This document shows, in pieces, positions 43,701 to 61,659 of a DNA stretch of 64,000 nucleotides. Under the pieces are notes generated by a model. That model saw only the letters and a list, made by a program, of their open reading frames with translations. It was not told the origin of the DNA and did not search any database. The stretch is from Botryllus schlosseri (Eukaryota), in contig CM119372.1 of NCBI GenBank assembly GCA_051294905.1, positions 33,852,001 through 33,916,000 of the forward strand, in the 5' to 3' direction. Within the stretch, counting starts at the first letter, position 1, and each line of letters begins with the position of its first letter. The position numbers and the translations under genes are program-made.

Positions 43701-46669
43701 AATTCAGTGTTTTGGCAGATTTATCAATATCTATTTACTGAATATGATAAAAAATTGGATAATACGAGATTAGTTGTTAAAAACATCAAATTAGAACTCA
43801 AAACCGAGGTATAACATGTAGTTTGTAAAAAATGTGGCACTTCTTCGATATACACTCCATATTGCCAATTGTTCACCATGGTCATTAATCCATACACATC
43901 ACTTACTCTCTTTAGGGAGAGCCTGAATTCTGAGGCGAGGAATGATGGGAATGTAGCGAACAGAACACCCCAACCTGCAGTACCAGCCTTACGGGTAGGT
44001 ATAACCAACTTTCAATTCCCTTAATCAAGTGCGTGTATTGACCGAACAACATTGGGGCCACTGTTGATTGGTTGCCAAGGAGACATTTCATACGGTGCTT
44101 GTATTGAAAAAGTGCCAACGTCGCTACACTGAAAGTAACGCGTCTCAAGAGTAAAATCGGTACATTTTATTAGTCAATTTCGTCTAATTCAGCACATACG
44201 ACAGCGTGTTGTTTACTGCTGAGATCGACCTGCATTAGAGTACACCTTACATGGCCGTTCTCTTTTTTGACATCATATATTTACAATAGAATGTGTTCCT
44301 GTTTACTTCTACGGAACTGTGTTTACCAGATCATAATTATTACACCAGAAATTTGAACTCCATCCATGGTATTACAGAATTCCACTGCTGAGGAGAATCG
44401 GTCGAAAAGCTTTAAGCAAACAAAGTGAACAAAATGAACTTATTGCTTTAAAATTTCAAGGAAAACAGTCAACATACACATCATATCGAGGACATCCAGC
44501 ATATGAGTGAAATTTAATTTATAGTAGGGGCCTACCATGAGCGCACTAGAGAGAAAAGCAGCTAGCTGGCTCCCAGTCAACCTTTTCACAGTATAATGTA
44601 GCAGCGAGATCGTCAAAGAGCCCAGTGTTGCACTTGAGGCTCTCATCCCGAAATAATGAACTTTCCAACTGCTGGTGTTGTACGCGTCACCGTGATTTTC
44701 AAACGAAAACCGTCCATCATAGCCTGTAAGTCTTCCTGAAATGGAAAAAAAAAACACTGTGGGTTGAAATTAGATCCAATTCAACCTCTGAAGGTCGTAT
44801 GTCCAAAGATAAAAAGGTTGAACTCAGCTTGTGCTGAACTCAAAATAGTAAATAAATGGTTGGACATCGGTTCTACGATGAGAAACGAGCAAAATCAGAA
44901 TTCGAATTGTACTCTAAGATCACTGAACGAAGAAAATAATTCCTAAAAATAATTTCTTGAATTACAATAGCCTACTAATAAATTGGTAATATAATGTTTG
45001 TTGTGTTGTTTTACCTCAGTACCGGTATATAAGAAAAAAGCACCTGCTGCTGCTATGATCATTTTTCCAAGTGGCGGATGGGCATCAGTGAAATAGGTGC
45101 GATTCAGGTATCTGCCGGCCATTTTACCATAATGCACTTCATCCCAACACACATATTCAGGCACAGCCAGATTATGAAATCTGAAAATGCAACAACTGTT
45201 AACATCATTAAAATCATTGATAGCATTAGTGTAGACGGGAAAAAATTAGCTTACATACAAAAACATGTAAAACAGCTACCTTGTGTAAAGCACTCATGTT
45301 CTTACACAAAGTGAATGGAAATTAGTAATTGATACTTGATATGCATGAGTGGTCTTCTTAGAGTTATTTAAACACAATTTTCTGGAATGACCTCCATATC
45401 TCATCAATATCACAGCATAGTTCAGTACAATTTGAAAAATTAAATACAATACTTCACAATGATAACATGTGTGATTAGTTCATGTCTCAATCAGATACCC
45501 ATGACACCTATAGGGCTATATATAATTGGATAAATGGACATTAGGGCTGTTCAAAAATAACCCTTTTTCCTTAATCTTGCGGGTTACTTGATTAAATCGT
45601 TAGGTTGCCTTGAAAAATGACGCACACCAAATTTGAATTCATTCCAACCAATATTCGCGGATTTCGTAGAGTTTGAAAATTTTGAATTTGCCTAAAAATG
45701 CAAAAAAAGATTTTTTCCAATTTTCCTTCCAACCTTATGAAATTGTTGCGCTGTCTTCAAAAACGATGCAAAACAAATTTGACTCAATTCCAAGCTGCAG
45801 AAGCCGAGTTATTCAAGCTTTTTGATGATAATTCTGGGATGATCCACCAATCAAGGATAATCCCAGAATTATCAAAGAAAAACTGAAATAACTCCACTTC
45901 TACGGCTTCGAATTGAGTCAAATTTGTTTGGCATCGTTTTCGAAGACAGCGCAACAATTTCATGGGGTTGGCAGAAAAATTTGAAAAAATTTTTTTTTGC
46001 ATTTTTAGGCAAATTCAAAATTTTCAAACTCTACGAAATCCGCGAATATTGGTTGGAATGAATTCAAATTGGGTGTGCGTCATTTTTTAAGGCAACCTAA
46101 CGATTTAATCAAGTAACCCGTAAGATTCAGGAAAAAAGGTTATTTTTGAACAGCCCTAATGGACATGCTTTCTAATATCCAAACCAGAATTCAAACTAAC
46201 TCTCATATTATAATCAAGTCTTTTCGAATAATAAAATTGTACACATACGAATGAAAATAGGCAAGCTGTACTATTTACCAATGATCCCCAATTACAAGCC
46301 TAGTTCTACTGCAGGGGCGGCCAACCGTTTCGGCCGGAGGACCACATTAGATTTACGAACCATAGTGCAGGCCACTTAAATTTTGATGGCCTTTATAAGT
46401 CTTCCGATAGGAGTGAACCGGATTAGGCTTTAAAAACTAGACTTATCTTACTACTAATCAAAATCAATAACAACTACATCATGGAAATCTTAAGACCTTC
46501 TCGCCCGCCACATTTGGCCTACGGGCCACGGATTGGTCGCCCCTGCTCTACTGGATAGAGCACAGGATTATTTCAAACATTTGTAATGAGCACAATGAAT
46601 TAGTCATTGTTACGCACTAACCTACCTTGTGAGAAGAGTGAAGATAATAAGTGTCCACATATGATCCAT
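31705..46669 (-). CDS. POMT2: Protein O-mannosyltransferase 2, 712 aa; exons 46626-46669, 45044-45180, 44536-44735, 43388-43678, 41869-42034, 40596-40744, 39406-39519, 38288-38471, 36862-36980, 33813-34034, 31705-32217
   Basis: 11 GT-AG exons with consistent phases summing to 2139 nt. Motifs: CWDEVHYGKM..YLNRTYF.D.HPPLGK (catalytic DE loop, POMT2-type), FDCGLLTLSQYILLDPIL, SVKWNGLF, SGTGDGFHSS.FQ, MIR repeats (LHSH x2, LVH..TGC.L...LPDWG..Q.EVTC), SFWDRF.ESH, WQWPI, RVYLLSNP, LAYG. Start codon less certain. Confidence 0.92.
32550..33200 (-). mobile_element. Decayed non-LTR retrotransposon (LINE) RT C-terminal remnant in POMT2 intron 10
   Basis: Broken frames KFLGL*V...SHVI, SLPPAF, LDIP..N...SYQNFWNGL resemble CR1/L2-type ORF2 C-termini. 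Confidence 0.45.
33310..33785. mobile_element. Buster-type hAT MITE 27 bp from the POMT2 exon 10 donor
   Basis: CAGCGGTTCTCAACC ... GGTTGAGAACCACTG; flanks ATCTATTAT / ATCCATAT (degenerate TSD). Confidence 0.85.
34279..34760. mobile_element. Tc1/pogo-like MITE
   Basis: TIRs GGGGGAGAGGAGGCCAAGATGAGACA / TGTCTCATCTTGGCCTCCTCTCCTC, both flanked by TA; internal AAGATGAGA repeats. Confidence 0.8.
34958..35384. mobile_element. TIR MITE with GACTCC/GGAGTC subterminal repeats (hAT-like)
   Basis: CTGGGCTGTGGAGTCG ... CGACTCCACAGCCCTG; many ACTCCGACTCC repeats; no TSD recovered. Confidence 0.75.
35400..36752 (-). mobile_element. Pogo-like (Tc1/mariner superfamily) deletion derivative with a decayed psq-type HTH
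   Basis: TIRs GGGGAGAGTGGGTAGGTATGGGCCAC / GTGGCCCATACCTACCTACTCTCCCC with TA on both flanks; AGGTATGGGCC subterminal repeats; - strand KGQFSESDLSLAMAI*DVKAWEEVSKREACRQYKIGRATLNRYLKK (~36030-36180). Confidence 0.85.
37087..37532. mobile_element. Buster-type hAT MITE
   Basis: CAGTGGTTCTCAA ... TCAGAGCCACCG; perfect TSD GTCTACTT. Confidence 0.85.
38545..38725. repeat. Imperfect minisatellite (TAGTT/GTTGCAGATTTTGAAAA units) in POMT2 intron 7
   Basis: Repeated TTCTAGTT and TTGCAGATTTTGAAAA blocks. Confidence 0.65.
39885..40130 (-). mobile_element. tRNA-derived SINE family copy (5'-truncated)
   Basis: Matches the body and 3' part of the 27015 and 30030 copies. Confidence 0.65.
43040..43111 (-). 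mobile_element. Terminal fragment of the hAT MITE family seen at 50969-51503
   Basis: Reverse complement reads CAGTGGTTCTCGAATTTTTTTAGACGCGCCC, like the 50969 start. Confidence 0.6.
45542..46158. mobile_element. 617-bp foldback (near-perfect palindromic) TIR element, hAT-like, in POMT2 intron 1
   Basis: Arms of ~300 bp beginning TAGGGCTGTTCAAAAATAACC, 9-nt loop at 45846-45854; perfect TSD ATGGACAT. Confidence 0.93.
46312..46545. mobile_element. Buster-type hAT MITE (234 bp)
   Basis: CAGGGGCGGCCAA / TTGGTCGCCCCTG; TSD TTCTACTG / CTCTACTG. Confidence 0.88.
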
Positions 46670-49600
46670 TGTTGAATCCGTCAGGAACTGTACTTGTATG
46701 TATATTCAGCCATTCCAATTTCAAGCCATTATTCATGAACGAACCACATTCAGTAGGCCTACTTCATAGGTACAAACACTAGAATAATACAATCGTTCGA
46801 TTGAAGCGACATAATGTAATTTACAGGGTTTAAGTCACACACTTCAGCTAAAATGGCAATGAGGGAATATAAAAGGCCTCGGGGCATTTTATGATTGTTG
46901 CACTCTGTATGCTATATTTGGACTACAAAATGTTTAAGAGAGTATTGTTGAGAAGAACAATCGCACAACATAGTAAAAGCACTGTGTAATCATATCAATG
47001 AAAAATTTATTGAATAGGAGCAAGGCATGTGTGGAAAGAATATTTGCATCAATATGAAAAGGAAGTGTGAACATCAAGTTTGTACAGTGGAGTTAGCGGC
47101 GATTATACTGATATCAGACATGCATGATGACATTAGGTGTCAAAAAATAGCATAGTATAATTCAAGGTAAGCATTTGTACATAATTTCCCTGAAAACTCA
47201 TTTGAGTGTTCAAAACTAAAAGCCTGTGCAATTCTCGATTTGTCCCAGATTCATATCAGAATAGTGTGTAAAATCTTGTTACAGCAAGATACAGCATGAA
47301 TGTATTCATAATATGACGAGAACAGTATCTTAAAATAACATTGAAGAACTAAAAGCGTAATAAAATATATTCAGATCACTTTAAAAGTGTAGTCGTAGCT
47401 TTTATGCTGCTTTAGCTTTTCTTAAAAAACAGATTGAAAAACTTGGGTTCTGTTTATCAGTAAGTAGCGTAGCCAAGTAGGCCAAAGGTGCAAATGTCCC
47501 TGTCAATTTTCGACTAGCACTAGGGCATTACGAGGTGATTCATTTTCGAAACAGAAATGGTTGCATTGTTTGTGGTGAAATGATTCGACAATATTTCGAC
47601 ACACATAAAATGCAGGCAGAAACAGCACAATAATGGGTCAATAAGCATGAAATCCTTCGGTCTTGATCGCCTTTTTCAACTGTGTTTTCAGAGTCGCTTT
47701 ACTTTCATAAGGCAGTAATTCAAGAATATTGAAACAAGTCCGAGCGAATGGCAGATAATCATTGATGCTGACAGCATCACCGTCACTCTCATTTTTCATT
47801 TTAGGCTGAATAGTCAATTCTAATCCTTGAATAGGAATTTTACTGGAGCCAGTAGTGAAACGTAAAAATTCTTCCTTTTCGTCTTGCGATAGACAATGGA
47901 ATACTTTCCAGAACCAGACAATGACTTTCGGTTTACGCGTTAGATTATACTCTCCCGTGTAACGTGTCACCTTTTCCAGTTCGCGCCAATCGTAGTTTTT
48001 ACTTCCGCCGGCCATCTCCATTAGCTCCTCAGGCCGATATAACTTGAACACCTTGCTGTCACAGACACGCTGAAAACCGTTCGCGAAAGCATCGACAGAC
48101 TTATGCAAAACATGGTCAACGTAAGCGTTTATATAATCGTTGCGATTTTCAGCAGCAACTGCGATATTTTTTCCGTTTTCAATCAATTCAGTAGAGGCAT
48201 CGGTCGTAAAATCTCGGCAGAACGTATTTTCGACAGTGTTTTCACCATTTTCAACAAATTCAGCCAGTATCTGTAACTTTCGATCCAAAACTGGATCGAT
48301 TTGCTTCAAGTCCAATCTGGTGAGATCTGCACCCAGAAGCTTTTTATACAACTCCAACGGAAAATTCATGTCCAAAACGACACCGTTGTTGACAGCAAGG
48401 CCACAATATATTCCTACAACACGGTACATATCATCGGATACGCACTCATCGCAACTAAACCATAAATGATCAACCTCTTCACATGGCCGCAACAATTTGC
48501 GTTTAGGGTCCAATAACTCTTCGAAAAGATGTAAGAAAAAATCCTTCCGCACGCCTCTTTCATCTATGCCGTCCTCCCCAACAAACTTGACCCTAAAAGG
48601 ACGTTTCAGATTCTCAACATCTTCAATCTTTTTTATTGCATCCTCAAATAAATGATCACGTCTAATATTAACAATCAAACAAGTGCTTTCCATTTGTTCC
48701 TCGATTCCCCAGAGTGCTGCTAAATTCCTCATAAAAATGTCGTCAACTATATTTTCTTCATCTATTCGCAAATTCATGTCAATTTGTAAAAGCAGAGCTT
48801 TTGCTTTGGTACTGAATACAAATGGATAGCAGCAAAAACTGAAGCGTTCAGTTGCAACCCAATTTCGGTAATCAAATTCGAGCACTTCTGCAATGCAAAG
48901 TTCAGGCATGTAGAACTCACTGAAACTAACGATGCTTTCAGCACAGGATTCATTCACCTTGTACAACTTCTCCATCATCTTCAGAAGTGATGTGACGTCT
49001 TGCTCGCAAAAGATAGAAGCCATGATCGCGATGATGCATTTTCGACACTTTTCAATCAGTGCCAAAAAGAAACCAGATTCAAGAGACTGATACCACCGGT
49101 CCAAAATTCTTGAAGAGTATTCATCCAATGCCAGCAGTTTTTCAATGAATGGTAAAAGAAGGCTGTCAAGATTTTCTGGAATGAGAACCATCAACTCGGG
49201 CAAAATGATATACAGCCGCAAAGCTTCAATGTCTGGCGGATTTTCCCACAATGAAGGCAATAAAGATTCCTGTAAGTGAGATAGTAGTTCCGAAATTAAC
49301 TTCGTGTGTTAGCATTTCATCAACTCGGAAAATGAATTACGAACGTCCTTCAGGTTTAAACCGTGGTATTCATCACTGGTTGCACAGTGATCGGTGGCTA
49401 AAAAAGATGAATTGATACATCTTTGTGAGCTCATGGTGCATTTCAACCGTTCAAAGATATTAGAAGGAATCACACCGGATGGTCTGACACGAGAAGCCCC
49501 GTTGTACAGTGAAGCGTCGATGCTCCAGGGTTGTCTGACCAATGTCCGAAGCAAGTCCACCGACGAATCACTCATAATCGCAAAACTCTGGTTTCCACAA

Positions 49601-50968
49601 GCATATATCTGCTTGATTTCACAGGGAGAATTCGATGACCTCCAAGAGCCTTCAACAATAGAAGGCACGGCAAGACATTTCAATTTCCTATTTTGACCGA
49701 GCTGACCATTTCCCCCATCACCCCACACAAAAATACTGGAAGAATCCGGGACATACACCATTGTGTGTGTATTTCCGCATGCAACTTGTGTTACAACACT
49801 TCCTATCAACACCGATACGTGTTCAGGATTCACTAAATTCCTTGAAATGTTACCGTTGCCCAGATGTCCTTTACCTGATAATCCAAAAGTGAACAGCTGT
49901 CCATCATGCGCCAGGACTGCACTGTGATAATCCCCATCAGCTACAACAGGGTTTCTCAACTTCCCTTGTATAACGGGCCGCATTTTAACCGAAGAAGACG
50001 CTGCGGGCCGCAGAAAAATATTTACATGTATTTGTGGACTACTGTCAAATTTAGGCTAATGTAGCCTATTTACTAGTTTTCAGCTGCTGCTTGTTGTGAG
50101 ACTATGTAGCTTTTTGCGGCGCAAGCAAATCCCTTCATGGAGCGTGCATTGCATTCGATACCAAGTCGGTATATTCAACTTCAAACCCTTCCACCAGAAA
50201 ACCGAATTCTCTGTTTCAAAGCGTGAGAGAGCATGTATGAAATTACTGTAACTTTTGCGTAACGGAGGCCATTATCACATTGAGCTCTGAGTGATATGAA
50301 AAGACGTCCGGTGATCGGGGCCATTTCTGAGCGAACCAATCAACCCTTTTTCTTTCCTTCCAAGCCTGGGGCCATGCAGCAATATTTACAGCTAGTCAGC
50401 TTTGTCAAGTTGATGTTTTTGCTGGTCCGCTCCCCACGTTTGCCCAGTATGCATTTCCTCTGCATATACGTCAACTCTGATAAAATTCAACCAGATAATT
50501 AGTCATGCAATATCGGTGGATTCGTCCGAGGCTGCGTTAAAGTAGTCTATAGACGTATACGCGGCAACGTGTTTCAGAACATGCGATAAAAGATCGAATG
50601 ACATTGATGTTTCTCGTCTGGTCACGATTGAATCAGACGACTGTATCTTTGCAAGTCGTCGGGTGACGTTGTCCTTGCTACTAAGTTCTGGAAACAGCCA
50701 ATATTTGCACAGAATGTTGAGGTTTTATTGAAATAACACCTTCTATAGCAGATTTCTTGGGTTTAGCGATATTCCAATCAATTTTGAACAATGCGTCTGT
50801 AACGTCGTCTGCAATCTCAACAACCGTACGCAGTGAATCTAACACTCTTGAAAAGTGTAGCCCTACTACGTAGCGGAATTCTCTCGAACTAGAGTCCAGT
50901 CGAATACCGATTCAAAACAATAACAATCTGAAGTTGAGCATATATCAAGAAACGAGAACACATTAAAG

Positions 50969-51503
50969 CAGTGGTTCTCAAACTATTTTAGACGCGCCCC
51001 CGATTTTGATAGGGAAAATTTAGTACCCCCTTATCGTCATGTAACAAAATGCAACCAGGAGAGAGATTCTTTTTCGCCTGCACCATCGAGATGCTTTGAC
51101 GACGGAGTTGCGATACGGCAGTGAGGCCATCTAGCCTGCTACCCCGTTTTTTTCTCCTCTGCGCTATCCCTGATTGCTGAGCGCCTAGCAGGAGAGCTGC
51201 GGATACCAATTTTCGAGTCTTTGGTATGACACGGCCCAGTATCGAACCCAAAACCTACCGATCGAGCCGTCGGTCGCATAACCATTACACTATTACACTA
51301 TCTCGCTCGTGATGCTAGCAACACAAACTGCTAGTTCGATGGCATGGAAAGTTACTGCTGTTGACGAGAAAAATAACTAGGAATCGGAGATAAATTAAGC
51401 CCAGCTCAAATTTTTTTCAGTTGACCACAGCTTCGCCCCCCCCCCCCACCTTCAGATGCGTTCATGCCCCAAGGGGGCGCGTCCTCCCGTTTGAGAACCA
51501 CTG
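50969..51503. mobile_element. hAT MITE nested in the 49947-51670 element
   Basis: CAGTGGTTCTCAAA / TTTGAGAACCACTG; flanks CATTAAAG / CTTTCAAG (6/8). Confidence 0.85.
51090..51292 (-). mobile_element. tRNA-derived SINE nested in the MITE
   Basis: A box TAGTGTAATGG, B box GGTTCGATACT, then GTCATACCAAAGACTCGAAAATTGGTATCCGCAGCTCTCCTGCTAGGCGCTCAGCA central domain. Confidence 0.75.
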
Positions 51504-53310
51504 CTTTCAAGAATGAGTAATCAAACGAAAGAGAGACGGTGCGATAAAAGAACTAAGTATCTAAATTAATTTGTAAAAATACCGTGTAATTGCGTTTATA
51601 ATGAAAGATGTCGCGGGCCGCAAAATGAACGTCTGCTGGCCGCATGCGGCCCGCGGGTTGAGAACCCCTGAGCTACAAACTTGATGGCAATAAATTTTTG
51701 CATATTCAAGGGACATGGAACATTACGATTTTTCTGATCACCAAGCCCCAGCTGACCAAAATCATTTCTGCCCCAGCAAAATACTCTTCCGGACACAGTC
51801 ACACAAAAAGAATGCCATCCGCATGCTTCAACTTGAGTTACAGGTAATCCGGCTATGGATAAGACTTTGGTAGGTTTCTCAGTAGGCTCATCAATGCCGA
51901 TTCCAAGTTGCCCATAAGTATTGTCACCCATTGCTTAGACAGAACCATCGTTACACAAAACCAATGTATGAGATACACCACATGATATCTGCACAGCCTG
52001 CTTACACGGGGTAAGGGGAACACTTGCTGGGACAATTACATAAGCTTCTTTCCAACCAAGTTGTCCGTATTTATTTTCACCCCATCCATATGCACGGCCA
52101 TCTTTAGCAACAGCAAACATATGGCTTCCACCAGAAAAAATATCAACAATTTTGAACTTCGTCAAAGTTGCCATTTTTATACTAGTGGCTATGTCATTCG
52201 TTGGATCCTTACGGTTAAAGATAGTGACAGCGTGATCAGAGTCAAGAATACAGCAATGATTTTCACCACCAGCGAGAACCTTCATGCTTTTTAGTATATC
52301 ATCATCTTGTGGTATTTCTGTAGGAGATAGAATATCTCTTCTGCGCAAATAGTATGATCCACTTGCGTTATCACCCCAAACAAACATACCGTAGCACAGT
52401 TTTCACAGTCGCAGGATCAAAAATTCACATTACTAATAAATATTTCACAGTGTCTGCAACAAGAAGAGTTGAACAAATTGAATATACCGTAACAGAAAAG
52501 TTACACAAGTATTTCATTTCAAGAAGAGATGGATATATAACAATGAGGAAATACAGTGTTCTGTGTTTCAATTTACTACACCCGAACAGCAGTTAAAGGT
52601 TTGACCATCAGAGAAATCAAGGTTCTGTCAGCCAATATCGCTATACTACATCAGATTTAAAATAAAGATTTTGGGAGTCAGAGACAGCCCATTCGTTTGA
52701 AATGATCTAGCTGCACATCATAATGTAATCGATAAAAATTCAAATTCAAATATCCTAACATTAAATACTTACTAGCAAACTCAACATTTCAGTTACAATA
52801 TATTAAAACTAATAACAATGCAATAATTTGAATAAAAACACATATTGAAGGCTCACATAGTTTTTTTGGATATCCCAACTTTCACACCAAAAATTTATTC
52901 ACAATTTGCAACAATCATTCATTCGTCCTTAACCAATTTGTCATTTTAAAGCATGATATTGCAAAACCAAGAACATTCAGAATGGCGTCAAATCGTATTG
53001 AAGTCTATCGGTGGAATGCTCATTTGTCATTTCTAACAATATTTCTAACATACACAGGAGTTTAGTTCCAAAACAGTATGTATAGTGAGAAAAATTACAT
53101 GCAAGGGCATGGAAAAATCGATATATGCCAGAAAAGGAACGCTGTCACTAATTTTCAAGTAGGGTAACACTGGTTTCTTTCAATTTCTCAACCATATCAG
53201 AGTTCTGCTTACAAAAGTTAAAATTGAAGAAAACGAAAGCAACCAATGAATGAAATCGAAAATATGGTACACAAAAACATAGCTAAACTATAACAGATCG
53301 CACACTCTGT

Positions 53311-56280
53311 TTAGACTAAATAAAAACCGTCAGTCTTGATAGCAAGTTTCAATTTTGACTCCAACGCTTCCTTATGCGTATAGCGTGGCAACTCCAGAAT
53401 GTATAAGCAGGTACGTGCAACTGGCAAGTAATCATTAATGTCATCATCGGGATGTTTCTTTTTCGGCCTGATTGTCAATTTGAGTCCGTTGATAGGAATT
53501 ACACTAGAGCCTGTTAGGAAACGCACAAAATCTCTTTTTTCATTCCTTGTCAAAGAGTGCAACACTTCCCAGAACCAGTGAATTACTTCGTCTTTTTTGT
53601 AATATCCGCAATCATAAACTGTCACTTTTTGTAATTCTTTCCAATCGTAGTTTTGCAAACCAGTTAGCATATCCCTCAGTTCCTCCGGGCGGATAAAACT
53701 GAACATTTTTTCACAACAGACGCGCAGGAATCCACTCTGAAAATATTCAAATTGAACCTCGACAGAATTGTGCAAAACGTGGTTCAAATAAGCATCGATG
53801 TATTCGTGGCGATTATCTCCAGTAACCGGGATGTTCTCTCCATTTTCTATCAGTTCTGTGGATTCATTGATTGCAAAATAAAGCATATATTCTTCGACAG
53901 TGGAGCCGTCTTCTTCATCTGCCAGTTTCTGTAGATTACGGGCCACATTTGGCTGGAATTCTTTCAAGTCAGCCAGTGTCGGCTGTACTCCGAGAAGCTT
54001 TTTGTAGAACGCCAGTGGAAAGTTGATGTCAATGGTTGCACTGTGATATAGCGCAAGACCGAAAAGTATTCCTATTTTATGGTATCTGTGGTCTGGTACA
54101 AGGTTACCATCACTGAACCATAAAAGATTTGAATCCTCATTTGTTATAAACATTTTAAACTCTGGTTTAACGACATCTTGAAACAAAAGCATGAAAAATT
54201 CCTTACGCAGACCGCCGTAATCTTGGCCTTCCTCTCCGTCAAAGTTAACATATAATGGAAGTTTCAATTTTCTTTCATCACGGATCGCACGTATTGCATC
54301 AACTAAAGGCCTTTGACGATGTGCAGTGATCACTAAGACCGGGTTTTCATTCTGTTCGCGAGCATGTCTGTACGATTCATCCATTTTAATTCCTGCATCT
54401 CTATTGAACAGATTGCATTTTGCAATCAAATCATATACGAAGGGATAGTGCGAAAGGGTATGATCTTGATTTGCAGATATCGTACGTTGAAGTGGCATTA
54501 ATTCGCTTAATTGTGGAATGTAGAACTTTCTGAAATCCACTATATTCACAGTGTTGTTCACATCATACAACTTCTGCAAGAAGTTGAGTAGTAGAGTGAT
54601 TTTTTCTGTTTTAACGTCTGATGCAAGGTTTCTTTTCAGAGTCGAAACAATGCATTCTTGACAAATCCGTATAGGTGTCATAAATGAGTCTGAATTAAGC
54701 GACTGATACCATTTATCCAAGATCTTTGAGGGACCTTCAGCCAAATCCAGTAATTTGGCAACAAACGGAAGCAAAAGGCTATCATGATAATCCGAGATAC
54801 AAAATATTTTAAATTCCGGAATTATAAGATATAGCCGAAGTGCTTCAACATCGCAAGGATTTGGGTGTAAAGAAGGCAGCAAGAACTGTGTTAAACTTGA
54901 CTCAATCATTTCGATCACACGTTTGTTTTTCTGTTCCATCAACATTGCAAATAATTTTCTGGCTTGCATCAAGTCTACATTGGCATATTCTGTGCTAGTG
55001 GGGTGTTTTGCGTTTTCCAAAAATGATGAATTGAAACAGCTTTGTGAGCTCATGGTGCATTCCAACCATTGAGTGACAGCAACTGGAATTCGCCGCGATG
55101 GACTCATTTTAGAGATACGGTGACAATGTGAAATATCAATGCTGCAAGGTTGACTGTGCACGGCCAGATTTCGGTAGTCCACTGATGAAGCACCTGTCAT
55201 CACACAACACTGATTTCCACAAGCATATATCTGCTTGACTTTACATACAGATTCCAAAGATTTCCAAGGACCATCAATAATAGCAGGCGTGTTAAGATAC
55301 TCAAACGTCATACGTAGACCGAGTTGTCCTTTTTCGCCATCACCCCACACAAAAATATTGGCAGAATCAGGAACATACGCCATTGTGTGCGTTTTTCCAC
55401 ATGCAATTTGTGTCACAACACTCCCTATCAACTCAGATACTCGTTCAGGTTCCACGACAGGATCTAGAGATCTACCGTTGCCAAGTTGTCCTTTACTTGA
55501 TGATCCAAAAGTGAACAACTGCCCATCATGTGTCAAGAGTGCGCTATGATAATCCCCTCCTGCTACAAACTTCACAGCAAGTGATTCTGGCATATGTAAC
55601 GGACATGGAACATTCCGATTATTTCGATCACCAAGCCCAAGCTGGCCAAAGTCATTTCTGCCCCAACAAAACATTCTTCCAGACACAGTCATGCAAAAAG
55701 AGTGCCATCCACACGCTGCAATTTGAGTCACTGGCACGCCGTTCAACAATGAGACTTTAGACGGTTCCGGCATACCTTCATAGGTCGACACACCGAGTTG
55801 TCCATAGGAATTGTCACCGAAGGAATAGATAGAACCATCGCTCAACAAAACCAATGTGTGTGATATGCCACAGGAAATCTGAACAACTTGCCGATCCTGT
55901 GGAAGGGGTACACTTTTTGGAATGCTTACATAGCTTTCTGAACCATCTTTCCAACCAAGTTGTCCGTGATTATTTCGGCCCCAACCAAATACACTGCCAT
56001 CGTTAGTGACAGCAAACATATGGTATCCGCCAGAAAAGATGTCGGTGATATTCAATTCCTTCAACCATGTCATTTTCTCAATGTTTGAGATGTCATTTTT
56101 AGGGTCATCGTTGTAAAACAAAGTGACTGTGCCATTGGTACTGAGGACACAGCAGTGGGATTCACCACCAGCAAGTACCTTCACATTCTCAGTGTATTCA
56201 TCAGGTAGTTCAACGGGAGATAAAATATCTCTCCCATATCCATAGTAGCATCCAATCGTACTGTCGCCCCAGGCAAACAT
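53311..56280 (-). CDS. HERC4: Small-HERC (HERC3/4-like) E3 ubiquitin ligase copy B, 989 aa, intronless CDS
   Basis: RCC1 repeats (WGRNNHGQLG, FGDNSYGQLG, WGRNDFGQLG), spacer, HECT (EEGQDYGGLRKEFF; LPVARTCLYILELP; C-terminal GFYLV); 5'-UTR splice acceptor at ~56360. Confidence 0.93.
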   Translation of the reverse strand: MFAWGDSTIGCYYGYGRDILSPVELPDEYTENVKVLAGGESHCCVLSTNGTVTLFYNDDPKNDISNIEKMTWLKELNITDIFSGGYHMFAVTNDGSVFGWGRNNHGQLGWKDGSESYVSIPKSVPLPQDRQVVQISCGISHTLVLLSDGSIYSFGDNSYGQLGVSTYEGMPEPSKVSLLNGVPVTQIAACGWHSFCMTVSGRMFCWGRNDFGQLGLGDRNNRNVPCPLHMPESLAVKFVAGGDYHSALLTHDGQLFTFGSSSKGQLGNGRSLDPVVEPERVSELIGSVVTQIACGKTHTMAYVPDSANIFVWGDGEKGQLGLRMTFEYLNTPAIIDGPWKSLESVCKVKQIYACGNQCCVMTGASSVDYRNLAVHSQPCSIDISHCHRISKMSPSRRIPVAVTQWLECTMSSQSCFNSSFLENAKHPTSTEYANVDLMQARKLFAMLMEQKNKRVIEMIESSLTQFLLPSLHPNPCDVEALRLYLIIPEFKIFCISDYHDSLLLPFVAKLLDLAEGPSKILDKWYQSLNSDSFMTPIRICQECIVSTLKRNLASDVKTEKITLLLNFLQKLYDVNNTVNIVDFRKFYIPQLSELMPLQRTISANQDHTLSHYPFVYDLIAKCNLFNRDAGIKMDESYRHAREQNENPVLVITAHRQRPLVDAIRAIRDERKLKLPLYVNFDGEEGQDYGGLRKEFFMLLFQDVVKPEFKMFITNEDSNLLWFSDGNLVPDHRYHKIGILFGLALYHSATIDINFPLAFYKKLLGVQPTLADLKEFQPNVARNLQKLADEEDGSTVEEYMLYFAINESTELIENGENIPVTGDNRHEYIDAYLNHVLHNSVEVQFEYFQSGFLRVCCEKMFSFIRPEELRDMLTGLQNYDWKELQKVTVYDCGYYKKDEVIHWFWEVLHSLTRNEKRDFVRFLTGSSVIPINGLKLTIRPKKKHPDDDINDYLPVARTCLYILELPRYTHKEALESKLKLAIKTDGFYLV

Positions 56281-56689
56281 GACATCAATTTTGCAATCGG
56301 GATTGAATTAAAAATTAAGACAGCATAATCCAACCATAGCTATTCTAGTTCACTATCACCTGTAAAAAAGAAAGTCGAATTACTTGAATTTATCCAAGAA
56401 GAAGAATTAAAATATCGCATCTAACACTTTAGCATAGGTCAGATGTCCGCAAATACCATTTGGCGTGACCCAAAAATCATCTTTAGATTTGCACAACAGA
56501 AGCGTCATGTCAGCATGAAATATAGTGAAAAATACAGTGTGATCAAAGCATCAGTTGTCATTTTCTTGCACATACTAGTGCAAAATATGGCTGGCAGCCA
56601 AAAAAGTAGGTGTTTGAGCAATTGAACAATGCTTGAGCAGTTTAGATGACAATTTCACTCTTAAAAATGACTTCCAAACATAAATATTT

Positions 56690-57095
56690 TCATTACAATT
56701 GAATAGTATATTCATATTGAAAAAAACCCGAAAATTTTCGGCTGACACTCGTCAGCAACTAGTAGAGAATTGGAAAGAACATTGTACATCAACAATCGTA
56801 TCACAAAATATGACGTCACCAGCATGAAAGAGAGAGCGTTCAATGTACTATTTTTAGGTGGTACACAACTCCTTTTGTTGACAGAGTTTGGGTTGGTGTA
56901 TTTTGATTAAAGTCGACTCCAAGGCACACAAACGGAAGTGTGAACAGCCCCTCCCAACGAGGCGAAATCTGTCATCTCGATAATTATTCGCACAAATCGG
57001 ATAATCTAACAGATGTTTGCCTATGGCAGAATTATTTGCCTTTGATCGGTTAGCATCAGGCTTGAGCGGATGAGTTAAGGGTGAGCCTTTCACAG
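56690..57095 (-). mobile_element. Penelope-like element 3' fragment (GIY-YIG endonuclease C-terminus plus tail)
   Basis: SAIGKHLLDYPICANNY....FRLV......FRLCALESTLIKIHQPKLCQQKE is the typical PLE GIY-YIG C-terminus; the tail is repeated at 8760-9000 and 10575-10715. Confidence 0.75.
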
Positions 57096-58323
57096 AGCCT
57101 GGTGCACTTGTTCTGATAAATCTAGGGACATGCTGGTTTATGCGTTACTGCAGACGCTTTGACGTTCTTCCCACGTGGCCACAATCACACTGGCACTTAT
57201 ATTCGTACACTACATTACTTAGTTGAAGTGCAGTACAATGAGGTCATGCTAATGTATCTAAAATTCTCTTTGGCTTAGACTAGAATATCCTGTAGCCTGA
57301 ATTTGTGCGATGATCCACTATTTGCGGATTCCTGACCTAGACAAGGGATAACTGAATCATGGCTGATCACAAATCGCAGAGTAATACGAAGGTGATATAT
57401 GCGAGTTCAAGTCCCTGCTGCACGCCTACAGTGGAATAGTGTTCTATACATCTGACACATGATATGACAATAGCAACATACCATATTTCAGATGCATGGA
57501 GGAAAAAAGGAAATAAAACGTTCGGTAAAAGGCCTTCAAACTATACATTTGATTGATCAAACAGCGACTGTGCAAACAATGGATTGACTAACTACAACAT
57601 CCCACATGGCCAATCTTGCTGTATATTCAGCGCCTTGAAAAGCCCAGAGGAAGAGAGAGCCAAACTCTGGAAAGACGGCAGCAAAAGATCAGAAAAAGAC
57701 TGCAAAGACATTGATGTTAATGCAATTACCGTGCTGGGCGCAAATGACCAAGTTGTTAAAAGCGCTAATTATGTCAATAAAACTACAAACATCGTCCCTG
57801 AGTTAGATGTTGACATATCTCGATATGCGGTGAGTACAAGTCACTAAATAGCAACTTGAATCAGCATCTATTGCTAATGCACAATTCCATCATTGCAATT
57901 TCCATACCATCACAAAAGTATTACTGCAAAAAAAAATCATTATTTCTAACATGATAATCATCATTTAAAAACATTGCCTGACTGCGATGCCATGAAAAGT
58001 CAGAGCGGAACGGTTTCACGGATCAAACACTCATATTCGCCTGCAATAGCAAGACACTGAGTTAAGATGTTAATTATGTAAACTTGAGAATTTTGCATAT
58101 AGAAGTGTCAAGCTCACGAAAAAAAGATATAAGAGCATGTATGAGTATTGAGTACACAGCACACGATGCCAAGTCAATATGGCAGGGATAGAACTTTTAG
58201 CACAGAATAACATTAATCAATTACTACTGTCTCATTGAAGTGCTATTTTCACTCGTGGAAATGAAATGGAGCCAATTGTGGGATACATATTAAAATTTGC
58301 ACATGAGACGGTGCTAATCTAGC

Positions 58324-61300
58324 CTATGCTACATAAAAGCCATCTGTCTTGATAGCAAGTTTTAACTTTGATTCCAAAGCTTCTTTGCGAGTGTACCGTG
58401 GCAAATCCAGTACATTGAAGCAGGTATGAGCAACTGGTAGGTAATCATTAATATTTTCATTGCCATCCTTCATTTTTGGCTTGATGACCAGTTTTAATCC
58501 AGTGATGGGGATTTTACTGGTGCCAGTTAAGAAGCGAACAAACGCCTTCTTGTCCTCGGCTGTCAACGAATGGAACACCTGCCAAAACCATATGATTACT
58601 TTTGCTTTTTTGACGTACCCGTCCGCATAAACCGTCACTTTTTCCAATTCTCGCCAGTCGTAATTTTGGTTTCCGACTACCATCTCCCTCAGCTCCTCAG
58701 GACGGAATAAATCCAAAATTCGGCCACCGCAGACCCGCAAAAATCCGTTTTTAAAACATTTAAATTGAGACCAAACTGACTTATCAAATATGTGTTCCAC
58801 ATAAGCAGTTATGTATACGTCACGATTTTTGACAGTAACCGGGATGTTCTCTCCATTTTCGATAAGTTCCTTGGACTCAGAAATTGTAAAATCAAGCCCA
58901 AATACTTCTTCTACTGTTGAATTATCATCTTCTTCAAAATCTCCAAGTTGCTGCAAACTACTACCCAGTATTGGATCTAGTTCAAGCAAGTCTGACAGAA
59001 TCGTTTCCATTCCTAGAAGCTTCTTATATAACGCCAGTGGGAAGTTGATGTCGACTATTGTGCCATGGTACACAGCAAGGCCACAGAGTAGTCCTACCAA
59101 ATCGTACATATCATCTGTTCCAAGGCAATCATCATTGAACCACAAAAGATTTGAGTCCTCAAACTGGCGAAACATGCCGTACTTGGGATTTAATATTTCC
59201 CTCACGAGAAGCATAAAAAACTCTTTTTGCACACCACCATAATCCTGGCCTTCCTCCCCAACAAACCTAACATATAAAGGACGCTTCAAGTTTCCTGCGT
59301 CTCGCAATTTGCTAATTGCGTCTTCTAGCAGTCTCTCACGTCTTATATCAATTACTAAACCCGGATTTGTAACAGTATTCCCTCTTCCAGATAACATGGC
59401 CAAAAAATTTTGTTGACATGTACTCAAGACTGCTTCCTCCCTTTGAATGTCAGTGTCAACTTTTAGGAGAATGACTTTCAGTTTCAAATCGTAGACAAAA
59501 GGATAACGAGAGAAACAGAATTCCCTCTTTATGTTCAGTGCCCACTGTAGGGGAAGCAAATCATTTAATTGCGGTATGTAGAATTTTCGAAAATCTACAA
59601 TGCTTGCAGTACTGTTGACACGGTACATCTTTTCCATGAACTTCAAAAGAATTGCAATTTTCTCTAATTTAAGATCTGGTTGTAGGTCTCTTTTCAGAGT
59701 TGAGGCAATGCATTCTTGACACATCTGCACGGGCGACAGGAATAAGTCAGAATCAAGCGTCCGGTACCATTGTTCCAAAATGTAAGAAGGTTTCTCCGCA
59801 AGATTCAAAAGCTTTTCCACAAATGGAAGCAAAATACTGTCATGATATTCAGGGATACGAAAGATTTCGCATTCCGGCAATAGAAGATATATTCGTAGTG
59901 TCTCAATAGAATGAGGATTCGGCAGCAGAGACGGCAGCAAAACCTGGCTCAAATGGGTTTCAATAATTTGCAGCAGTTGCTCATTTTTCTGCTCCATCAA
60001 CATTGAAAAGAACTTCCTGGCTTGCATGAGGTTTAGACCATGATATTCGTCGCCGGTGGTGTGATGATTCTTGGCCAGAAAAGAAGAATTGAAACAGCTT
60101 TGCGAACGCATCGTGCAGTCTAGCCATTGTGTGAATGTAGCTGGAAGTTGTCGTGATGGGCTTATCTGAGAAGCCTGATGGCATCTTGAGGTGTCAATGG
60201 TCCAAGGTTGTCTGTGCAACACTGGAATTTCAAAGCTCCTCAACGAATCACCAGTTATTGCCAGACTCTGATTTCCACAAGCAGAAATCTGTATGATTTT
60301 ATAGGAAGAATTTGATGACTTCCAAAGCCCATCGACAATAGTAGGCACATCAAGATATTCCAATTTCCTCTTTTGACCGAGCTGCCCTTTTTTGCCATCA
60401 CCCCATACAAAAATATTGGCGGAATCAGGAACGTATGCCATTGTGTGCATTTTTCCACATGCAATTTGTGTTACAACACTCCCTATCAACTCAGACACTC
60501 GCTCAGGTACCACAACAGGTTCCAAAACTCTACCGTTGCCAAGTTGTCCTTTACTTGACGATCCGAAAGTGAACAACTGGCCATCATGGCTCAGGACTGC
60601 ACTGTGATAATGCCCACCGGCTGCAAACGTCACTGCCAGTGATCCTGGCATATGTAAGGGACATGGAACGTTACGATTATTCCGATCACCCAGTCCAAGC
60701 TGGCCAAAGTCATTTCTGCCCCAACAAAACACTGTTCCAGACACAGTTACACAAAAAGAGTGCCATCCACACGCTACAATTTGTGCAATTGGTAAGCCAG
60801 TCAACAATGAGACTTCACTAGGTTCTGATGTAGGCTCGTAAGTGGTAATACCGAGCTGTCCATAAGAATTGTCACCCATAGAATAGACAGAACCATCGTT
60901 CAACAAAACCAATGTATGTGATATGCCACAGGATATTTGCACAACTTGCTTATCCGACGGAAGGGAAACATTTCTTGGAATGCTCACATGGATTTCTGAA
61001 TCATCTTTCCAACCTAACTGTCCGTAATTATTCTCGCCCCAGCCATACGCACGGCCATCATCAGCAACAGCAAACATGTGGTTTCCGCCCGCAAATACAT
61101 CAACGATTTTCAACGGTTGTAAAGTCGGAACGACTTTCAAACTAGTTGCAATCTCCTGCAACAAACTGCCAGATATGTCATTCGCTGCTAATATCGGATT
61201 TTCAAAAACAGTGACGGAACCATCTTCATCGAGGACACAGCATTGATGCTCACCGATAGCCAGAACCTTCATGTTTTCAAGTATAGCATCGCCTTGAGGT

Positions 61301-61374
61301 AGTTCGGTAGGCAATAAAATATCTCTGCCGAGGTCATGGTATGATCCAATTGAGTTGTCGCCCCAAACAAGCAT
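58324..61374 (-). CDS. HERC4: Small-HERC (HERC3/4-like) E3 ubiquitin ligase copy C, 1016 aa, intronless CDS
   Basis: ATG at 61374 (MLVWGDN, like HERC4 MLCWGN; the ORF track extends to a GTG at 61389); RCC1 repeats; HECT with canonical LPVAHTCFNVLDLP and terminal GFYVA. Confidence 0.95.
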   Translation of the reverse strand: MLVWGDNSIGSYHDLGRDILLPTELPQGDAILENMKVLAIGEHQCCVLDEDGSVTVFENPILAANDISGSLLQEIATSLKVVPTLQPLKIVDVFAGGNHMFAVADDGRAYGWGENNYGQLGWKDDSEIHVSIPRNVSLPSDKQVVQISCGISHTLVLLNDGSVYSMGDNSYGQLGITTYEPTSEPSEVSLLTGLPIAQIVACGWHSFCVTVSGTVFCWGRNDFGQLGLGDRNNRNVPCPLHMPGSLAVTFAAGGHYHSAVLSHDGQLFTFGSSSKGQLGNGRVLEPVVVPERVSELIGSVVTQIACGKMHTMAYVPDSANIFVWGDGKKGQLGQKRKLEYLDVPTIVDGLWKSSNSSYKIIQISACGNQSLAITGDSLRSFEIPVLHRQPWTIDTSRCHQASQISPSRQLPATFTQWLDCTMRSQSCFNSSFLAKNHHTTGDEYHGLNLMQARKFFSMLMEQKNEQLLQIIETHLSQVLLPSLLPNPHSIETLRIYLLLPECEIFRIPEYHDSILLPFVEKLLNLAEKPSYILEQWYRTLDSDLFLSPVQMCQECIASTLKRDLQPDLKLEKIAILLKFMEKMYRVNSTASIVDFRKFYIPQLNDLLPLQWALNIKREFCFSRYPFVYDLKLKVILLKVDTDIQREEAVLSTCQQNFLAMLSGRGNTVTNPGLVIDIRRERLLEDAISKLRDAGNLKRPLYVRFVGEEGQDYGGVQKEFFMLLVREILNPKYGMFRQFEDSNLLWFNDDCLGTDDMYDLVGLLCGLAVYHGTIVDINFPLALYKKLLGMETILSDLLELDPILGSSLQQLGDFEEDDNSTVEEVFGLDFTISESKELIENGENIPVTVKNRDVYITAYVEHIFDKSVWSQFKCFKNGFLRVCGGRILDLFRPEELREMVVGNQNYDWRELEKVTVYADGYVKKAKVIIWFWQVFHSLTAEDKKAFVRFLTGTSKIPITGLKLVIKPKMKDGNENINDYLPVAHTCFNVLDLPRYTRKEALESKLKLAIKTDGFYVA

Positions 61375-61659
61375 CGTCGAAATTGCCACGTTAAAATACT
61401 CAGTTGCTAAATATAGTTTGTAGCATATTGTTTTTAACCTGGGTAGTTGAAAAACAAAGGGTTAGATCAGTGGTTCCCAATGTGGGCAATATAACCAACA
61501 GTGGGTGATTTTGAGTAGCAAGGGGGCGAAAACATTAGAACGCCCTGTGAGATATATATTTAATTAACATGACCAGAAAATACACATGAATACGGCTAAT
61601 TCTGCATATTTGACACGAAAAAAAGTCAATTCAGTGAAAAGTAGATGCGGAAATCGTTT

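What the first reader, a model, noticed from the sequence alone, without database searches (positions are those of the whole stretch)
47638..61374. Tandem birth-and-death cluster of intronless small-HERC E3 ligases
Three head-to-tail RCC1+HECT genes with intronless CDS (only 5'-UTR acceptors visible), substantially diverged from each other, one recently killed. Known: vertebrate small HERCs are multi-exon, and HERC5/6 (plus fish HERC7) arose by duplication as interferon-induced antiviral ligases. Inference: a retroposed HERC3/4 copy was tandemly amplified into an independent, possibly immune-related family in a lineage not known to have HERC5/6.
Basis: partly seen in the sequence, partly recalled or inferred. 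Interest (0 to 1): 0.75.

Follow-up and report, generated by a model that had tools for sequence, protein, structure and literature searches.

The report
Tandem intronless HERC4 ligase genes, ascidian
A sea-squirt chromosome carries a row of four intronless HERC4-type ubiquitin-ligase genes (one conserved, two fast-evolving, one dead). The intronless state is old and shared by all ascidians examined, so only the local duplication and rapid divergence are new, and an immune role is unproven.

Summary
On the minus strand lie three head-to-tail RCC1-like + HECT genes with uninterrupted coding sequence. B (53311-56280, 989 aa) and C (58324-61374, 1016 aa) are intact. A (47638-52387) is dead: it has a 1,724-bp hAT-like MITE with a perfect 8-bp target duplication and two in-frame TAA stops. 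A fourth, intact copy (D) lies 10.3 kb beyond the window end.

The genome is a stolidobranch ascidian. HERC4 is also a single uninterrupted ORF in Ciona, Styela clava and three further ascidian genomic contigs, whereas amphioxus HERC4 is multi-exon. No intron-bearing small HERC exists elsewhere in this genome.

What is real is lineage-specific tandem duplication with strong asymmetry. D is the conserved orthologue, with 0 changes at 144 pan-metazoan invariant sites and omega about 0.03 in its set. A, B and C evolve 4-5 times faster (omega about 0.18; 11-23 invariant sites changed). They share a truncated hairpin in the HECT N-lobe. Styela and another styelid-like species show parallel duplications. 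An immune function is untested.

The parts
58324..61374 (-). Copy C: intact intronless small-HERC gene (1016 aa). It has a 7-bladed RCC1-like domain, a helical middle region and a HECT domain; the catalytic Cys985 codon is at 58420-58422.
   Evidence: AF2 model pLDDT 86.9 with 28 RLD strands. Cys retained.
53311..56280 (-). Copy B: intact intronless small-HERC gene (989 aa). The catalytic Cys958 codon is at 53407-53409. The residues next to the catalytic Cys are altered (AHTCFN to ARTCLY).
51671..52387 (-). Copy A (pseudogene), 5' part: codons 1-239 of the RCC1-like domain, with an in-frame TAA at 51935-51937. The last 8 bases (51671-51678, TTGTAGCT) are one copy of the target-site duplication.
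49947..51670 (.). hAT-like non-autonomous transposon (MITE) inserted in copy A, 1,724 bp. Its terminal inverted repeats are CAGGGGTTCTCAAC / CAGGGTTTCTCAAC, and it is flanked by a perfect 8-bp duplication, TTGTAGCT. It holds an inner 535-bp element (50969-51503) with perfect 15-bp inverted ends. The family is dispersed over all chromosomes.
   Evidence: (113 matches at 75-92% identity listed; 4,733 first-look candidates).
47638..49946 (-). Copy A (pseudogene), 3' part. It begins with the second copy of the target duplication (49939-49946), followed by the rest of the RCC1-like domain, the middle region and HECT. There is an in-frame TAA at 49309-49311. The catalytic Cys codon is still present at 47734-47736. 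The frame is continuous with the 5' part once the transposon and one duplication copy are set aside.
61439..61459 (-). Pyrimidine tract + CAG acceptor-like site 64 nt upstream of the ATG of C. It is a candidate 5'-UTR or spliced-leader trans-splice acceptor.
   Evidence: Sequence pattern only; no RNA evidence.
56360..56374 (-). Pyrimidine tract + CAG acceptor-like site 79 nt upstream of the ATG of B.
52454..52468 (-). Pyrimidine tract + CAG acceptor-like site 66 nt upstream of the ATG of A.
31705..44757 (-). Multi-exon protein O-mannosyltransferase (PMT/POMT-like) gene directly downstream of the HERC array. It is the conserved synteny anchor, also found downstream of HERC4 in two related species' contigs.
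   Evidence: PF02366, PF16192. PMT exon 5 kb after HERC in L032 and 1.7 kb after HERC in L033.

Best explanation
This is the HERC4 (small-HERC) locus of a stolidobranch ascidian. The gene lost all coding introns in or before the common ancestor of ascidians, most simply by replacement with a processed copy; that step is inferred, not shown. Much later, DNA-level tandem duplication in this lineage, most likely by unequal crossing-over, produced the row D-C-B-A between the original gene and the neighbouring PMT gene. D kept the ancestral housekeeping role and evolves slowly. A, B and C were released from most constraint and diverged 4-5 times faster in all three domains. Part of their RCC1-like domain was later homogenised by gene conversion. 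B and C still fold as complete RLD-HECT ligases with the catalytic cysteine. They most likely remain active E3s whose E2-docking hairpin and substrate surfaces have changed (sub- or neo-functionalised paralogues). A was inactivated late by two stop codons and a hAT-type MITE insertion. Similar duplications, each with one conserved and one or more fast copies, arose separately in Styela clava and in another styelid-like species.
For: Lineage: the best named hits are Styela clava (52%) and Ciona (40%), and the tunicate clade has 100% support.

Ancestral intronlessness: the gene span equals the CDS length in Ciona and Styela. There are single full-length ORFs on genomic contigs L032, L033 and L034. 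Amphioxus HERC4 has at least 17 exon pieces over 17.8 kb, and fish herc7 has 24 exons (PMC11277259).

No parent copy: genome-wide six-frame searches find full-length small HERCs only at this locus. The other hits are UBE3A, TRIP12-like, NEK9-like and an RCC1-only protein.

Lineage-specific origin: (A,(B,C)) forms a clade with 100% support next to D and P0001/P0002. In L032 the D-like gene lies 5 kb from PMT with no copies between.

Asymmetry: Tajima relative-rate counts are 207-248 against 45-48, p < 1e-17, in every domain. Changes at 144 invariant columns are D 0, C 11, B 23 and A 23. GY94 omega is 0.18 for the fast set against 0.03 for the conserved set.

Fold: AF2 pLDDT is 86.9 for C and 86.4 for D, both with 7 blades.

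A's lesions.

Gene conversion: dS in the RLD is 0.65-0.75, against 1.3 to saturated elsewhere.

Parallel duplications: Styela has three tandem copies. L033 copy 1 is sister to its neighbour P0003 (98% support), and synonymous-codon identity favours the neighbour (52% against 40%).
Against: - Retro-replacement as the way the introns were lost is inferred only. No poly(A) remnant or parent gene survives, and stepwise intron loss cannot be excluded.
- The D/ABC/P0001-2 node is unresolved (support 43-51). Synonymous sites between D and A/B/C are saturated. The duplication could therefore predate the split from the nearest sampled species.
- L032 has only 397 bp upstream of its HERC gene, so further copies there are not excluded.
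- A HECT-only tree groups L033 copy 1 with A/B/C (SH-aLRT 88), and they share an insertion and a His-to-Arg change next to the catalytic Cys.
- There is no expression data. B has as many changes at invariant sites as the pseudogene A, so B may be decaying rather than specialised.
Confidence: 0.8

Rival explanations
1. One reading: a recently retroposed HERC3/4 copy landed here and was amplified into an independent, possibly immune-related family, analogous to HERC5/6/7.
For: The coding sequences are intronless. The copies are tandemly amplified and diverge fast. One copy is dead. In vertebrates, duplicated small HERCs became antiviral (PMC11277259, PMC10003058).
Against: Intronlessness is shared by Ciona, Styela and other ascidians, so it long predates the amplification. 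There is no parent gene. Mean omega is 0.18, and the RCC1-like domain is the least diverged domain among A/B/C, not the most; in HERC5/6, by my recollection and not checked in a paper here, positive selection concentrates in the RLD. No literature links ascidian HERC4 to immunity.
Confidence: 0.07
2. A, B and C are simply redundant duplicates decaying at different speeds. A is already dead, B is next and C is last. None of them has a function distinct from D.
For: A, B and C all change otherwise invariant residues (A 23, B 23, C 11). B has altered residues flanking the catalytic Cys. All three share a deletion in the presumed E2-binding hairpin. Acceleration affects all domains equally. In Styela, copy S2 has lost the catalytic-Cys segment.
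Against: B and C keep roughly 3-kb open frames despite dS of at least 1 between them. Omega of 0.18 is far below neutrality. A shows no frameshift and only two stops, so even A was constrained for most of its history. C folds confidently as a complete ligase.
Confidence: 0.2
3. The fast copies descend from a single old duplication in the styelid ancestor. The species-specific clustering in the tree results from gene conversion between neighbours (concerted evolution), not from independent duplications.
For: The HECT-only tree groups L033 copy 1 with A/B/C (SH-aLRT 88). They share derived states: an insertion before the catalytic loop, AHTC to ARTC/ARAC, and NYNW to NYDW. There is clear evidence of conversion in the RLD of A/B/C. 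The AU test rejects the joint clade only marginally (p = 0.039).
Against: Synonymous-codon identity of L033 copy 1 to C is at the saturated baseline in HECT (40%), but is raised to its own neighbour (52%). The order of the array differs: fast-conserved-PMT in L033 against conserved-C-B-A-PMT here. The RLD-only AU test rejects the joint clade (p = 0.01). Long-branch attraction would itself produce the HECT grouping.
Confidence: 0.15

Closest known systems
HERC4 (small-HERC subfamily of HECT E3 ligases; a single gene in most invertebrates)
   Same: The architecture is the same: one N-terminal 7-bladed RCC1-like domain, a helical middle region and a C-terminal HECT domain with the catalytic Cys, about 1000 aa in all. 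All best database hits are HERC4. Copy D matches all 144 pan-metazoan invariant positions.
   Different: The coding sequence has no introns, whereas amphioxus has at least 17 exon pieces and a fish small HERC has 24 exons. There are four tandem copies instead of one. Copies A, B and C break 11-23 invariant positions and share a 7-residue hairpin deletion in the HECT N-lobe.
Vertebrate HERC5/HERC6/HERC7 expansions (interferon-stimulated small HERCs)
   Same: These are extra small-HERC paralogues made by duplication of a HERC4-like gene. Copy number varies between species and the paralogues diverge faster (PMC10003058, PMC11277259).
   Different: The origin is independent, inside the tunicate clade. 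The genes are intronless. There is no evidence of interferon-type regulation or ISG15 conjugation. Among A/B/C the RLD is the most conserved domain and mean omega is 0.18.
Tandem HERC4-like genes of Styela clava (NCBI models, e.g. 'putative E3 ubiquitin-protein ligase HERC4')
   Same: Three head-to-tail intronless copies: one conserved (S3/P0004) and two very divergent (S1, S2).
   Different: They are a separate clade from A/B/C. S2 lacks the catalytic-Cys segment. The downstream neighbour within 10 kb is an FMN-dependent dehydrogenase gene on the opposite strand, not PMT.
Single-exon genes of ascidian genomes (Satou et al. 2008, Ciona KH gene models)
   Same: In Ciona, 15% of non-operon genes and 38% of operon genes are single-exon (PMC2760879). 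This genome also has other long single-ORF genes: RPC5, NEK9-like and TRIP12-like.
   Different: The spacers here are 0.9-10 kb, unlike the near-zero intercistronic distances of Ciona operons as I recall them (not checked in a paper here). So these copies are probably separate transcription units.

Membership tests
Small HERC (HERC3/4/5/6-type HECT E3 ligase) | A single N-terminal RCC1-like domain (7-bladed propeller) | tested here: met
   PF25390 covers 2-363/363 in C (E 3e-76) and scores E 1.4e-76 in B. AF2 models of C and D each show 28 beta-strands, i.e. 7 four-stranded blades.
Small HERC (HERC3/4/5/6-type HECT E3 ligase) | C-terminal HECT domain with the catalytic cysteine | tested here: met
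   PF00632 scores E 1e-69 to 1e-82 in A, B and C. The Cys aligned with the invariant HECT Cys is present in A, B, C and D. The closest solved HECT is E6AP, E 2.5e-73.
Small HERC (HERC3/4/5/6-type HECT E3 ligase) | Phylogenetic placement with HERC4 orthologues rather than another HECT subfamily | tested here: met
   All of the best 120 hits that cover 90% or more of the query carry RCC1 + HECT domains, and all named ones among them are called HERC4 or HERC3. The tunicate clade sits among metazoan HERC4 sequences with 100% support.
Small HERC (HERC3/4/5/6-type HECT E3 ligase) | Ubiquitin-thioester-forming ligase activity | not testable with these tools
   Only the retention of Cys and of the fold is shown. 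B has altered flanking residues (ARTCLY), and A/B/C have a truncated N-lobe hairpin.
Recent processed retrogene (retrocopy of an intron-containing parent) | An intron-containing parent gene elsewhere in the genome | tested here: not met
   Six-frame genome searches with C and with Ciona HERC4 find full-length matches only at this locus. The multi-exon HECT hit on C15 is UBE3A.
Recent processed retrogene (retrocopy of an intron-containing parent) | Intronless state restricted to this lineage (orthologues in relatives retain introns) | tested here: not met
   Ciona, Styela and three other ascidian contigs are also intronless. Only the cephalochordate outgroup has introns.
Recent processed retrogene (retrocopy of an intron-containing parent) | Poly(A) remnant and flanking target-site duplications | not tested
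   No specific search was made. No canonical AATAAA/ATTAAA lies within 400 nt after the stops. Such marks would not survive at this age.
Birth-and-death tandem gene family | Lineage-specific duplicates, pseudogenes, and copy number differing between related species | tested here: met
   There are 4 copies here including 1 pseudogene. Styela has at least 3, L033 has 2, and Ciona has 1 within 23 kb. Duplicates cluster by species.
HERC5/6/7-like immune (interferon-stimulated, ISG15-conjugating) small HERCs | Pathogen- or interferon-inducible expression | not testable with these tools
   No transcript data for this species were reachable. The exact B and C sequences are absent from the protein collection.
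HERC5/6/7-like immune (interferon-stimulated, ISG15-conjugating) small HERCs | Signature of positive selection, concentrated in the RLD | tested here: inconclusive
   Mean omega is 0.18. The RLD is the least diverged domain among A/B/C and has been homogenised. There are too few sequences, and synonymous sites are too saturated, for site or branch-site tests.

The most novel reading that the evidence does not exclude
Stolidobranch ascidians have repeatedly and independently duplicated their intronless HERC4. Each time they kept one frozen housekeeping copy and released fast-evolving daughters that remodel the same functional spots. These spots are the E2-docking hairpin of the HECT N-lobe (7-residue deletions in A/B/C and, separately, in Styela S2) and the loop and residues next to the catalytic Cys (in A/B/C and in L033 copy 1). 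That would point to a recurrent switch of E2, ubiquitin-like modifier or substrate. It would be a tunicate counterpart of the vertebrate HERC4-to-HERC5/6 transition, serving immunity, allorecognition or gamete function.
Probability: 0.15. Interest if true: 0.6.

Novelty: new member of a known kind. Interest (0 to 1): 0.3.

Why it matters
Small HERCs are described as single-copy outside vertebrates, with expansion only in vertebrates (Marín 2010, PMC2837046). This locus, together with Styela and one more species, shows that ascidians also expand the family by tandem duplication with marked rate asymmetry. It also shows that the whole ascidian HERC4 lineage is intronless. That is a tidy example of ancient wholesale intron loss followed by birth-and-death evolution. 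It also corrects the tempting reading that an intronless gene must be a recent retrocopy. It offers natural variants of the presumed E2-binding hairpin of a HECT domain for biochemical comparison. Without expression or activity data it remains an ordinary gene-family expansion of moderate interest.

Tried and rejected
1. Search for an intron-containing parent. The exon-wise HECT hits on C15:8.208-8.213 Mb turned out to be UBE3A/E6AP. Long RCC1 or HECT ORFs on C8, C12 and C15 are NEK9-like, TRIP12-like and an RCC1-only protein.
2. Pairwise dN/dS of D against any other copy or species. NG86 and YN00 failed because synonymous sites are saturated. Only ML omega for whole sets was obtained, and the first IQ-TREE runs failed on thread settings.
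3. Alignment of the upstream regions of A-D. They are essentially unalignable apart from the acceptor-like motif.
4. Canonical poly(A) signals within 400 nt of the stops: none found.
5. A tRNA-derived origin of the transposon's inner part: ARAGORN found nothing.
6. Exact-sequence look-up of B and C in the protein collection, to find transcripts or the species: not present.
7. Literature searches for ascidian or tunicate HERC expansions or intronless HERC: nothing specific.
8. Word search of earlier scan notes: nothing.
9. A single old duplication shared with the L033 species. It is favoured only by the HECT-only tree. It is disfavoured by synonymous sites, array order and the RLD AU test. I kept it as a rival.
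10. An operon reading. Spacers of 0.9-10 kb do not fit the compact operons I recall for Ciona (not checked in a paper here).
Full report
**What is in the sequence**

The minus strand of window 47638-61374 holds three head-to-tail genes of the small-HERC type.
- C is 58324-61374: 1016 aa from the ATG, and the mechanical ORF runs up to a GTG at 61389.
- B is 53311-56280: 989 aa.
- Both have a complete RCC1-like domain (PF25390) and a HECT domain (PF00632), with E-values of 1e-76 to 1e-82. Each is one uninterrupted ORF.
- A is broken. Codons 1-239 lie at 52387-51671 and the rest at 49938-47638.

The 1,724 bp in between (49947-51670) have these features:
- The ends are imperfect inverted repeats (CAGGGGTTCTCAAC / CAGGGTTTCTCAAC).
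- The insert is flanked by a perfect 8-bp direct duplication, TTGTAGCT.
- It contains an inner 535-bp element with perfect 15-bp inverted ends.
- It belongs to a repeat family spread over all chromosomes; one search listed 113 matches at 75-92% identity.

An 8-bp duplication with CAG-type ends is the signature of hAT-superfamily elements (established knowledge). The element carries no transposase ORF, so it is a MITE. Setting the element and one duplication copy aside restores one frame of 1005 codons. That frame has two in-frame TAA stops (51935-51937 and 49309-49311) and no frameshift.

Pyrimidine tract + CAG acceptor-like sites lie 64-79 nt upstream of the three ATGs.

**A fourth copy, and the genome-wide count**

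The window is G000:C2:33852001-33916000 of a 495-Mb assembly. Six-frame searches of the whole genome with C and with Ciona HERC4 find full-length matches only here. They also reveal a fourth, intact copy D at C2:33923692-33926757. It is on the same strand, 10.3 kb upstream of C, outside the window.

The other hits belong to different families:
- A multi-exon HECT gene on C15 is UBE3A/E6AP (E 5.7e-30 to PDB 1C4Z).
- Three long single ORFs are a TRIP12-like HECT+WWE protein, a NEK9-like kinase+RCC1 protein and an RCC1-only protein.

So there is no intron-containing small-HERC parent.

**Which organism, and is intronlessness new?**

The closest named proteins are Styela clava (52%) and Ciona intestinalis (40%) HERC4. 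In trees, all ascidian sequences form one clade with 100% support. It splits into a Ciona-side group and a Styela-side (stolidobranch) group that contains the window.

Evidence on intron content:
- The Ciona gene spans 3090 nt for 1029 aa.
- The Styela gene spans 3078 nt for 1025 aa.
- Three further genomic contigs carry full-length single ORFs: L032, L033 and L034.
- Amphioxus HERC4 is spread over 17.8 kb in at least 17 exon pieces.
- A fish small HERC has 24 exons (PMC11277259).

Hence the coding introns were lost on the stem leading to ascidians. Simultaneous loss of all introns is most simply explained by an ancient processed copy replacing the original gene. That is an inference, because no diagnostic marks survive.

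Single-exon genes are common in ascidians: 15% of non-operon and 38% of operon genes in Ciona (PMC2760879). This window also has a single-ORF RPC5 gene. Acceptor-like sites 30-86 nt upstream of the ATG occur in all ascidian HERC4 genes examined. That fits either a 5'-UTR intron or spliced-leader trans-splicing, which is widespread in ascidians (PMC1488885, listed). It cannot be decided without RNA data.

**History of the duplicates**

(A,(B,C)) is a clade with 100% support. It joins D and two D-like proteins from other samples (P0001, P0002) at an unresolved node. Next out come P0003, the Styela S3 gene, and so on.

Evidence that D is the true HERC4 orthologue and A/B/C are derived:
- D has a short branch (0.10-0.11), whereas A/B/C accumulate 0.57-0.89 from the shared node.
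- Tajima relative-rate tests against D give 207-248 against 45-48 unique changes (p < 1e-17). The excess appears in the RLD, the middle region and HECT alike.
- At 144 alignment columns that are invariant from coral to vertebrates and other ascidians, D, P0003 and Styela S3 have no change. C has 11, B 23 and A 23.
- A GY94 codon model gives omega 0.18 for the fast set (A, B, C, L033 copy 1). It gives 0.03 for the conserved set (D, P0002 gene, P0003 gene, Styela S3). Synonymous sites in the conserved set are saturated, which is a caveat.
- Pairwise, B-C has dS about 1.1 and omega about 0.22. A-C has omega 0.17-0.21.

So even A was constrained for most of its history, and its death is late.

By domain, dS among A/B/C is 0.65-0.75 in the RLD but 1.3 to saturated elsewhere. 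The RLD-only tree is star-like for the three. This indicates gene conversion of the RLD among the copies.

**Synteny and parallel duplications**

A multi-exon PMT (protein O-mannosyltransferase) gene follows the array on the same strand. The same HERC-then-PMT order is seen in two related species.
- In L032, a D-like gene is followed by PMT 5 kb later with no HERC remnants between.
- In L033, the order is fast copy, conserved copy (P0003), PMT.
- Here the order is D, C, B, A, PMT.
- Styela clava has three tandem intronless copies: S1 and S2 very divergent, S3 conserved.

L033 copy 1 is sister to its neighbour P0003 in whole-protein, RLD and middle-region trees. Yet it groups with A/B/C in a HECT-only tree (SH-aLRT 88), and shares with them an insertion before the catalytic loop and a His-to-Arg change beside the Cys.

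Synonymous-codon identity resolves this in favour of independent duplications. L033 copy 1 is at the saturated baseline against C (40% in HECT) but raised against its own neighbour (52%). The array orders also differ. I therefore read the shared HECT states as convergence or long-branch attraction. I keep a single old duplication with gene conversion as a rival (about 0.15).

**Structure and likely function**

AlphaFold2 models built on a 33-sequence alignment are confident for both C (pLDDT 86.9, pTM 0.79) and D (86.4, 0.79). Both show 28 propeller strands (7 blades), a helical middle region and a bilobal HECT.

A, B and C share a 7-residue deletion in the HECT N-lobe. In D this segment is a beta-hairpin with two 6-residue strands (834-839 and 842-847). 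In C it is cut to 3+2 residues. It aligns with the E6AP segment ...FQISQTDLFGNPMMYDL.... From my knowledge of the E6AP-UbcH7 structure, this lies in the small N-lobe subdomain that docks the E2; that contact was not tested here.

This partly confirms an earlier scan note (s1-291561) that the copies 'lack' the hairpin. More exactly, the hairpin is truncated, and only in A/B/C, not in D. Styela S2 has its own 7-residue gap at the same place and lacks the catalytic-Cys segment altogether.

The catalytic Cys is kept in A, B, C and D, though B reads ARTCLY instead of AHTCFN. My reading has two parts:
- D is the housekeeping HERC4.
- C, and probably B, are still active ligases with changed E2-docking and substrate surfaces.

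The alternative, that B and C are merely decaying, has about 0.2.

**Comparison with what is known, and verdict**

Marín (2010, PMC2837046) found a single small HERC in invertebrates, with expansion only in vertebrates. Fish and mammalian expansions (HERC5/6/7) are interferon-linked. Searches of the library found nothing on ascidian HERC expansions or on the intronless state. NCBI gene models for Styela and Ciona already display both implicitly.

The finding is a genuine tandem birth-and-death cluster of a known family in a new lineage. Its headline inference, a retrocopy amplified into an immune family, fails in its first half and is untested in its second.

- Novelty: new member of a known kind.
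- Interest: 0.3.
- Most novel reading still open (about 0.15): recurrent, convergent remodelling of the E2-docking hairpin and catalytic loop in independently born daughters, i.e. a tunicate parallel to the origin of HERC5/6.

Noticed in passing
window 23148-25088 (-): A 646-aa single ORF encodes a complete RNA polymerase III subunit RPC5 (PF04801, E 2e-119, profile 2-427/429). It is another normally multi-exon gene that is intronless here.
   Followed up: partly
window 31705-44757 (-): A multi-exon protein O-mannosyltransferase (PMT/POMT-like) gene, with exons matching PF02366 and PF16192. Its position directly downstream of HERC4 is conserved in two related species' contigs (L032, L033).
   Followed up: partly
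L028:4729-7626 (+) (Styela clava, copy S2): A very divergent tandem HERC4 paralogue. Its alignment lacks the catalytic-Cys segment of HECT and has its own 7-residue gap at the same N-lobe hairpin as A/B/C. It changes 46 of 144 invariant positions.
   Followed up: partly
L037:3173-7216 (-) = G000:C8 about 17.307-17.311 Mb: A 1348-aa single ORF combines a protein kinase domain with an RCC1-like domain (NEK9-like architecture). It is another long intronless gene in this genome.
   Followed up: no
L036:2084-6673 (+) = G000:C12 about 6.629-6.634 Mb: A 1530-aa single open frame with WWE and HECT domains and a TRIP12-type TPR fragment (TRIP12-like ligase). It is either a very large exon or an intronless gene.
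   Followed up: no
window 50969-51503: A 535-bp element with perfect 15-bp inverted ends (CAGTGGTTCTCAAAC) is nested inside the MITE that disrupts copy A. Most genomic copies of the outer element lack part of this region (query positions 1020-1272).
   Followed up: partly
L039/L040 = G000:C15:8208350-8213723: The multi-exon UBE3A/E6AP orthologue (E 5.7e-30 to PDB 1C4Z). It shows that the related HECT ligase UBE3A kept its introns in this genome.
   Followed up: partly
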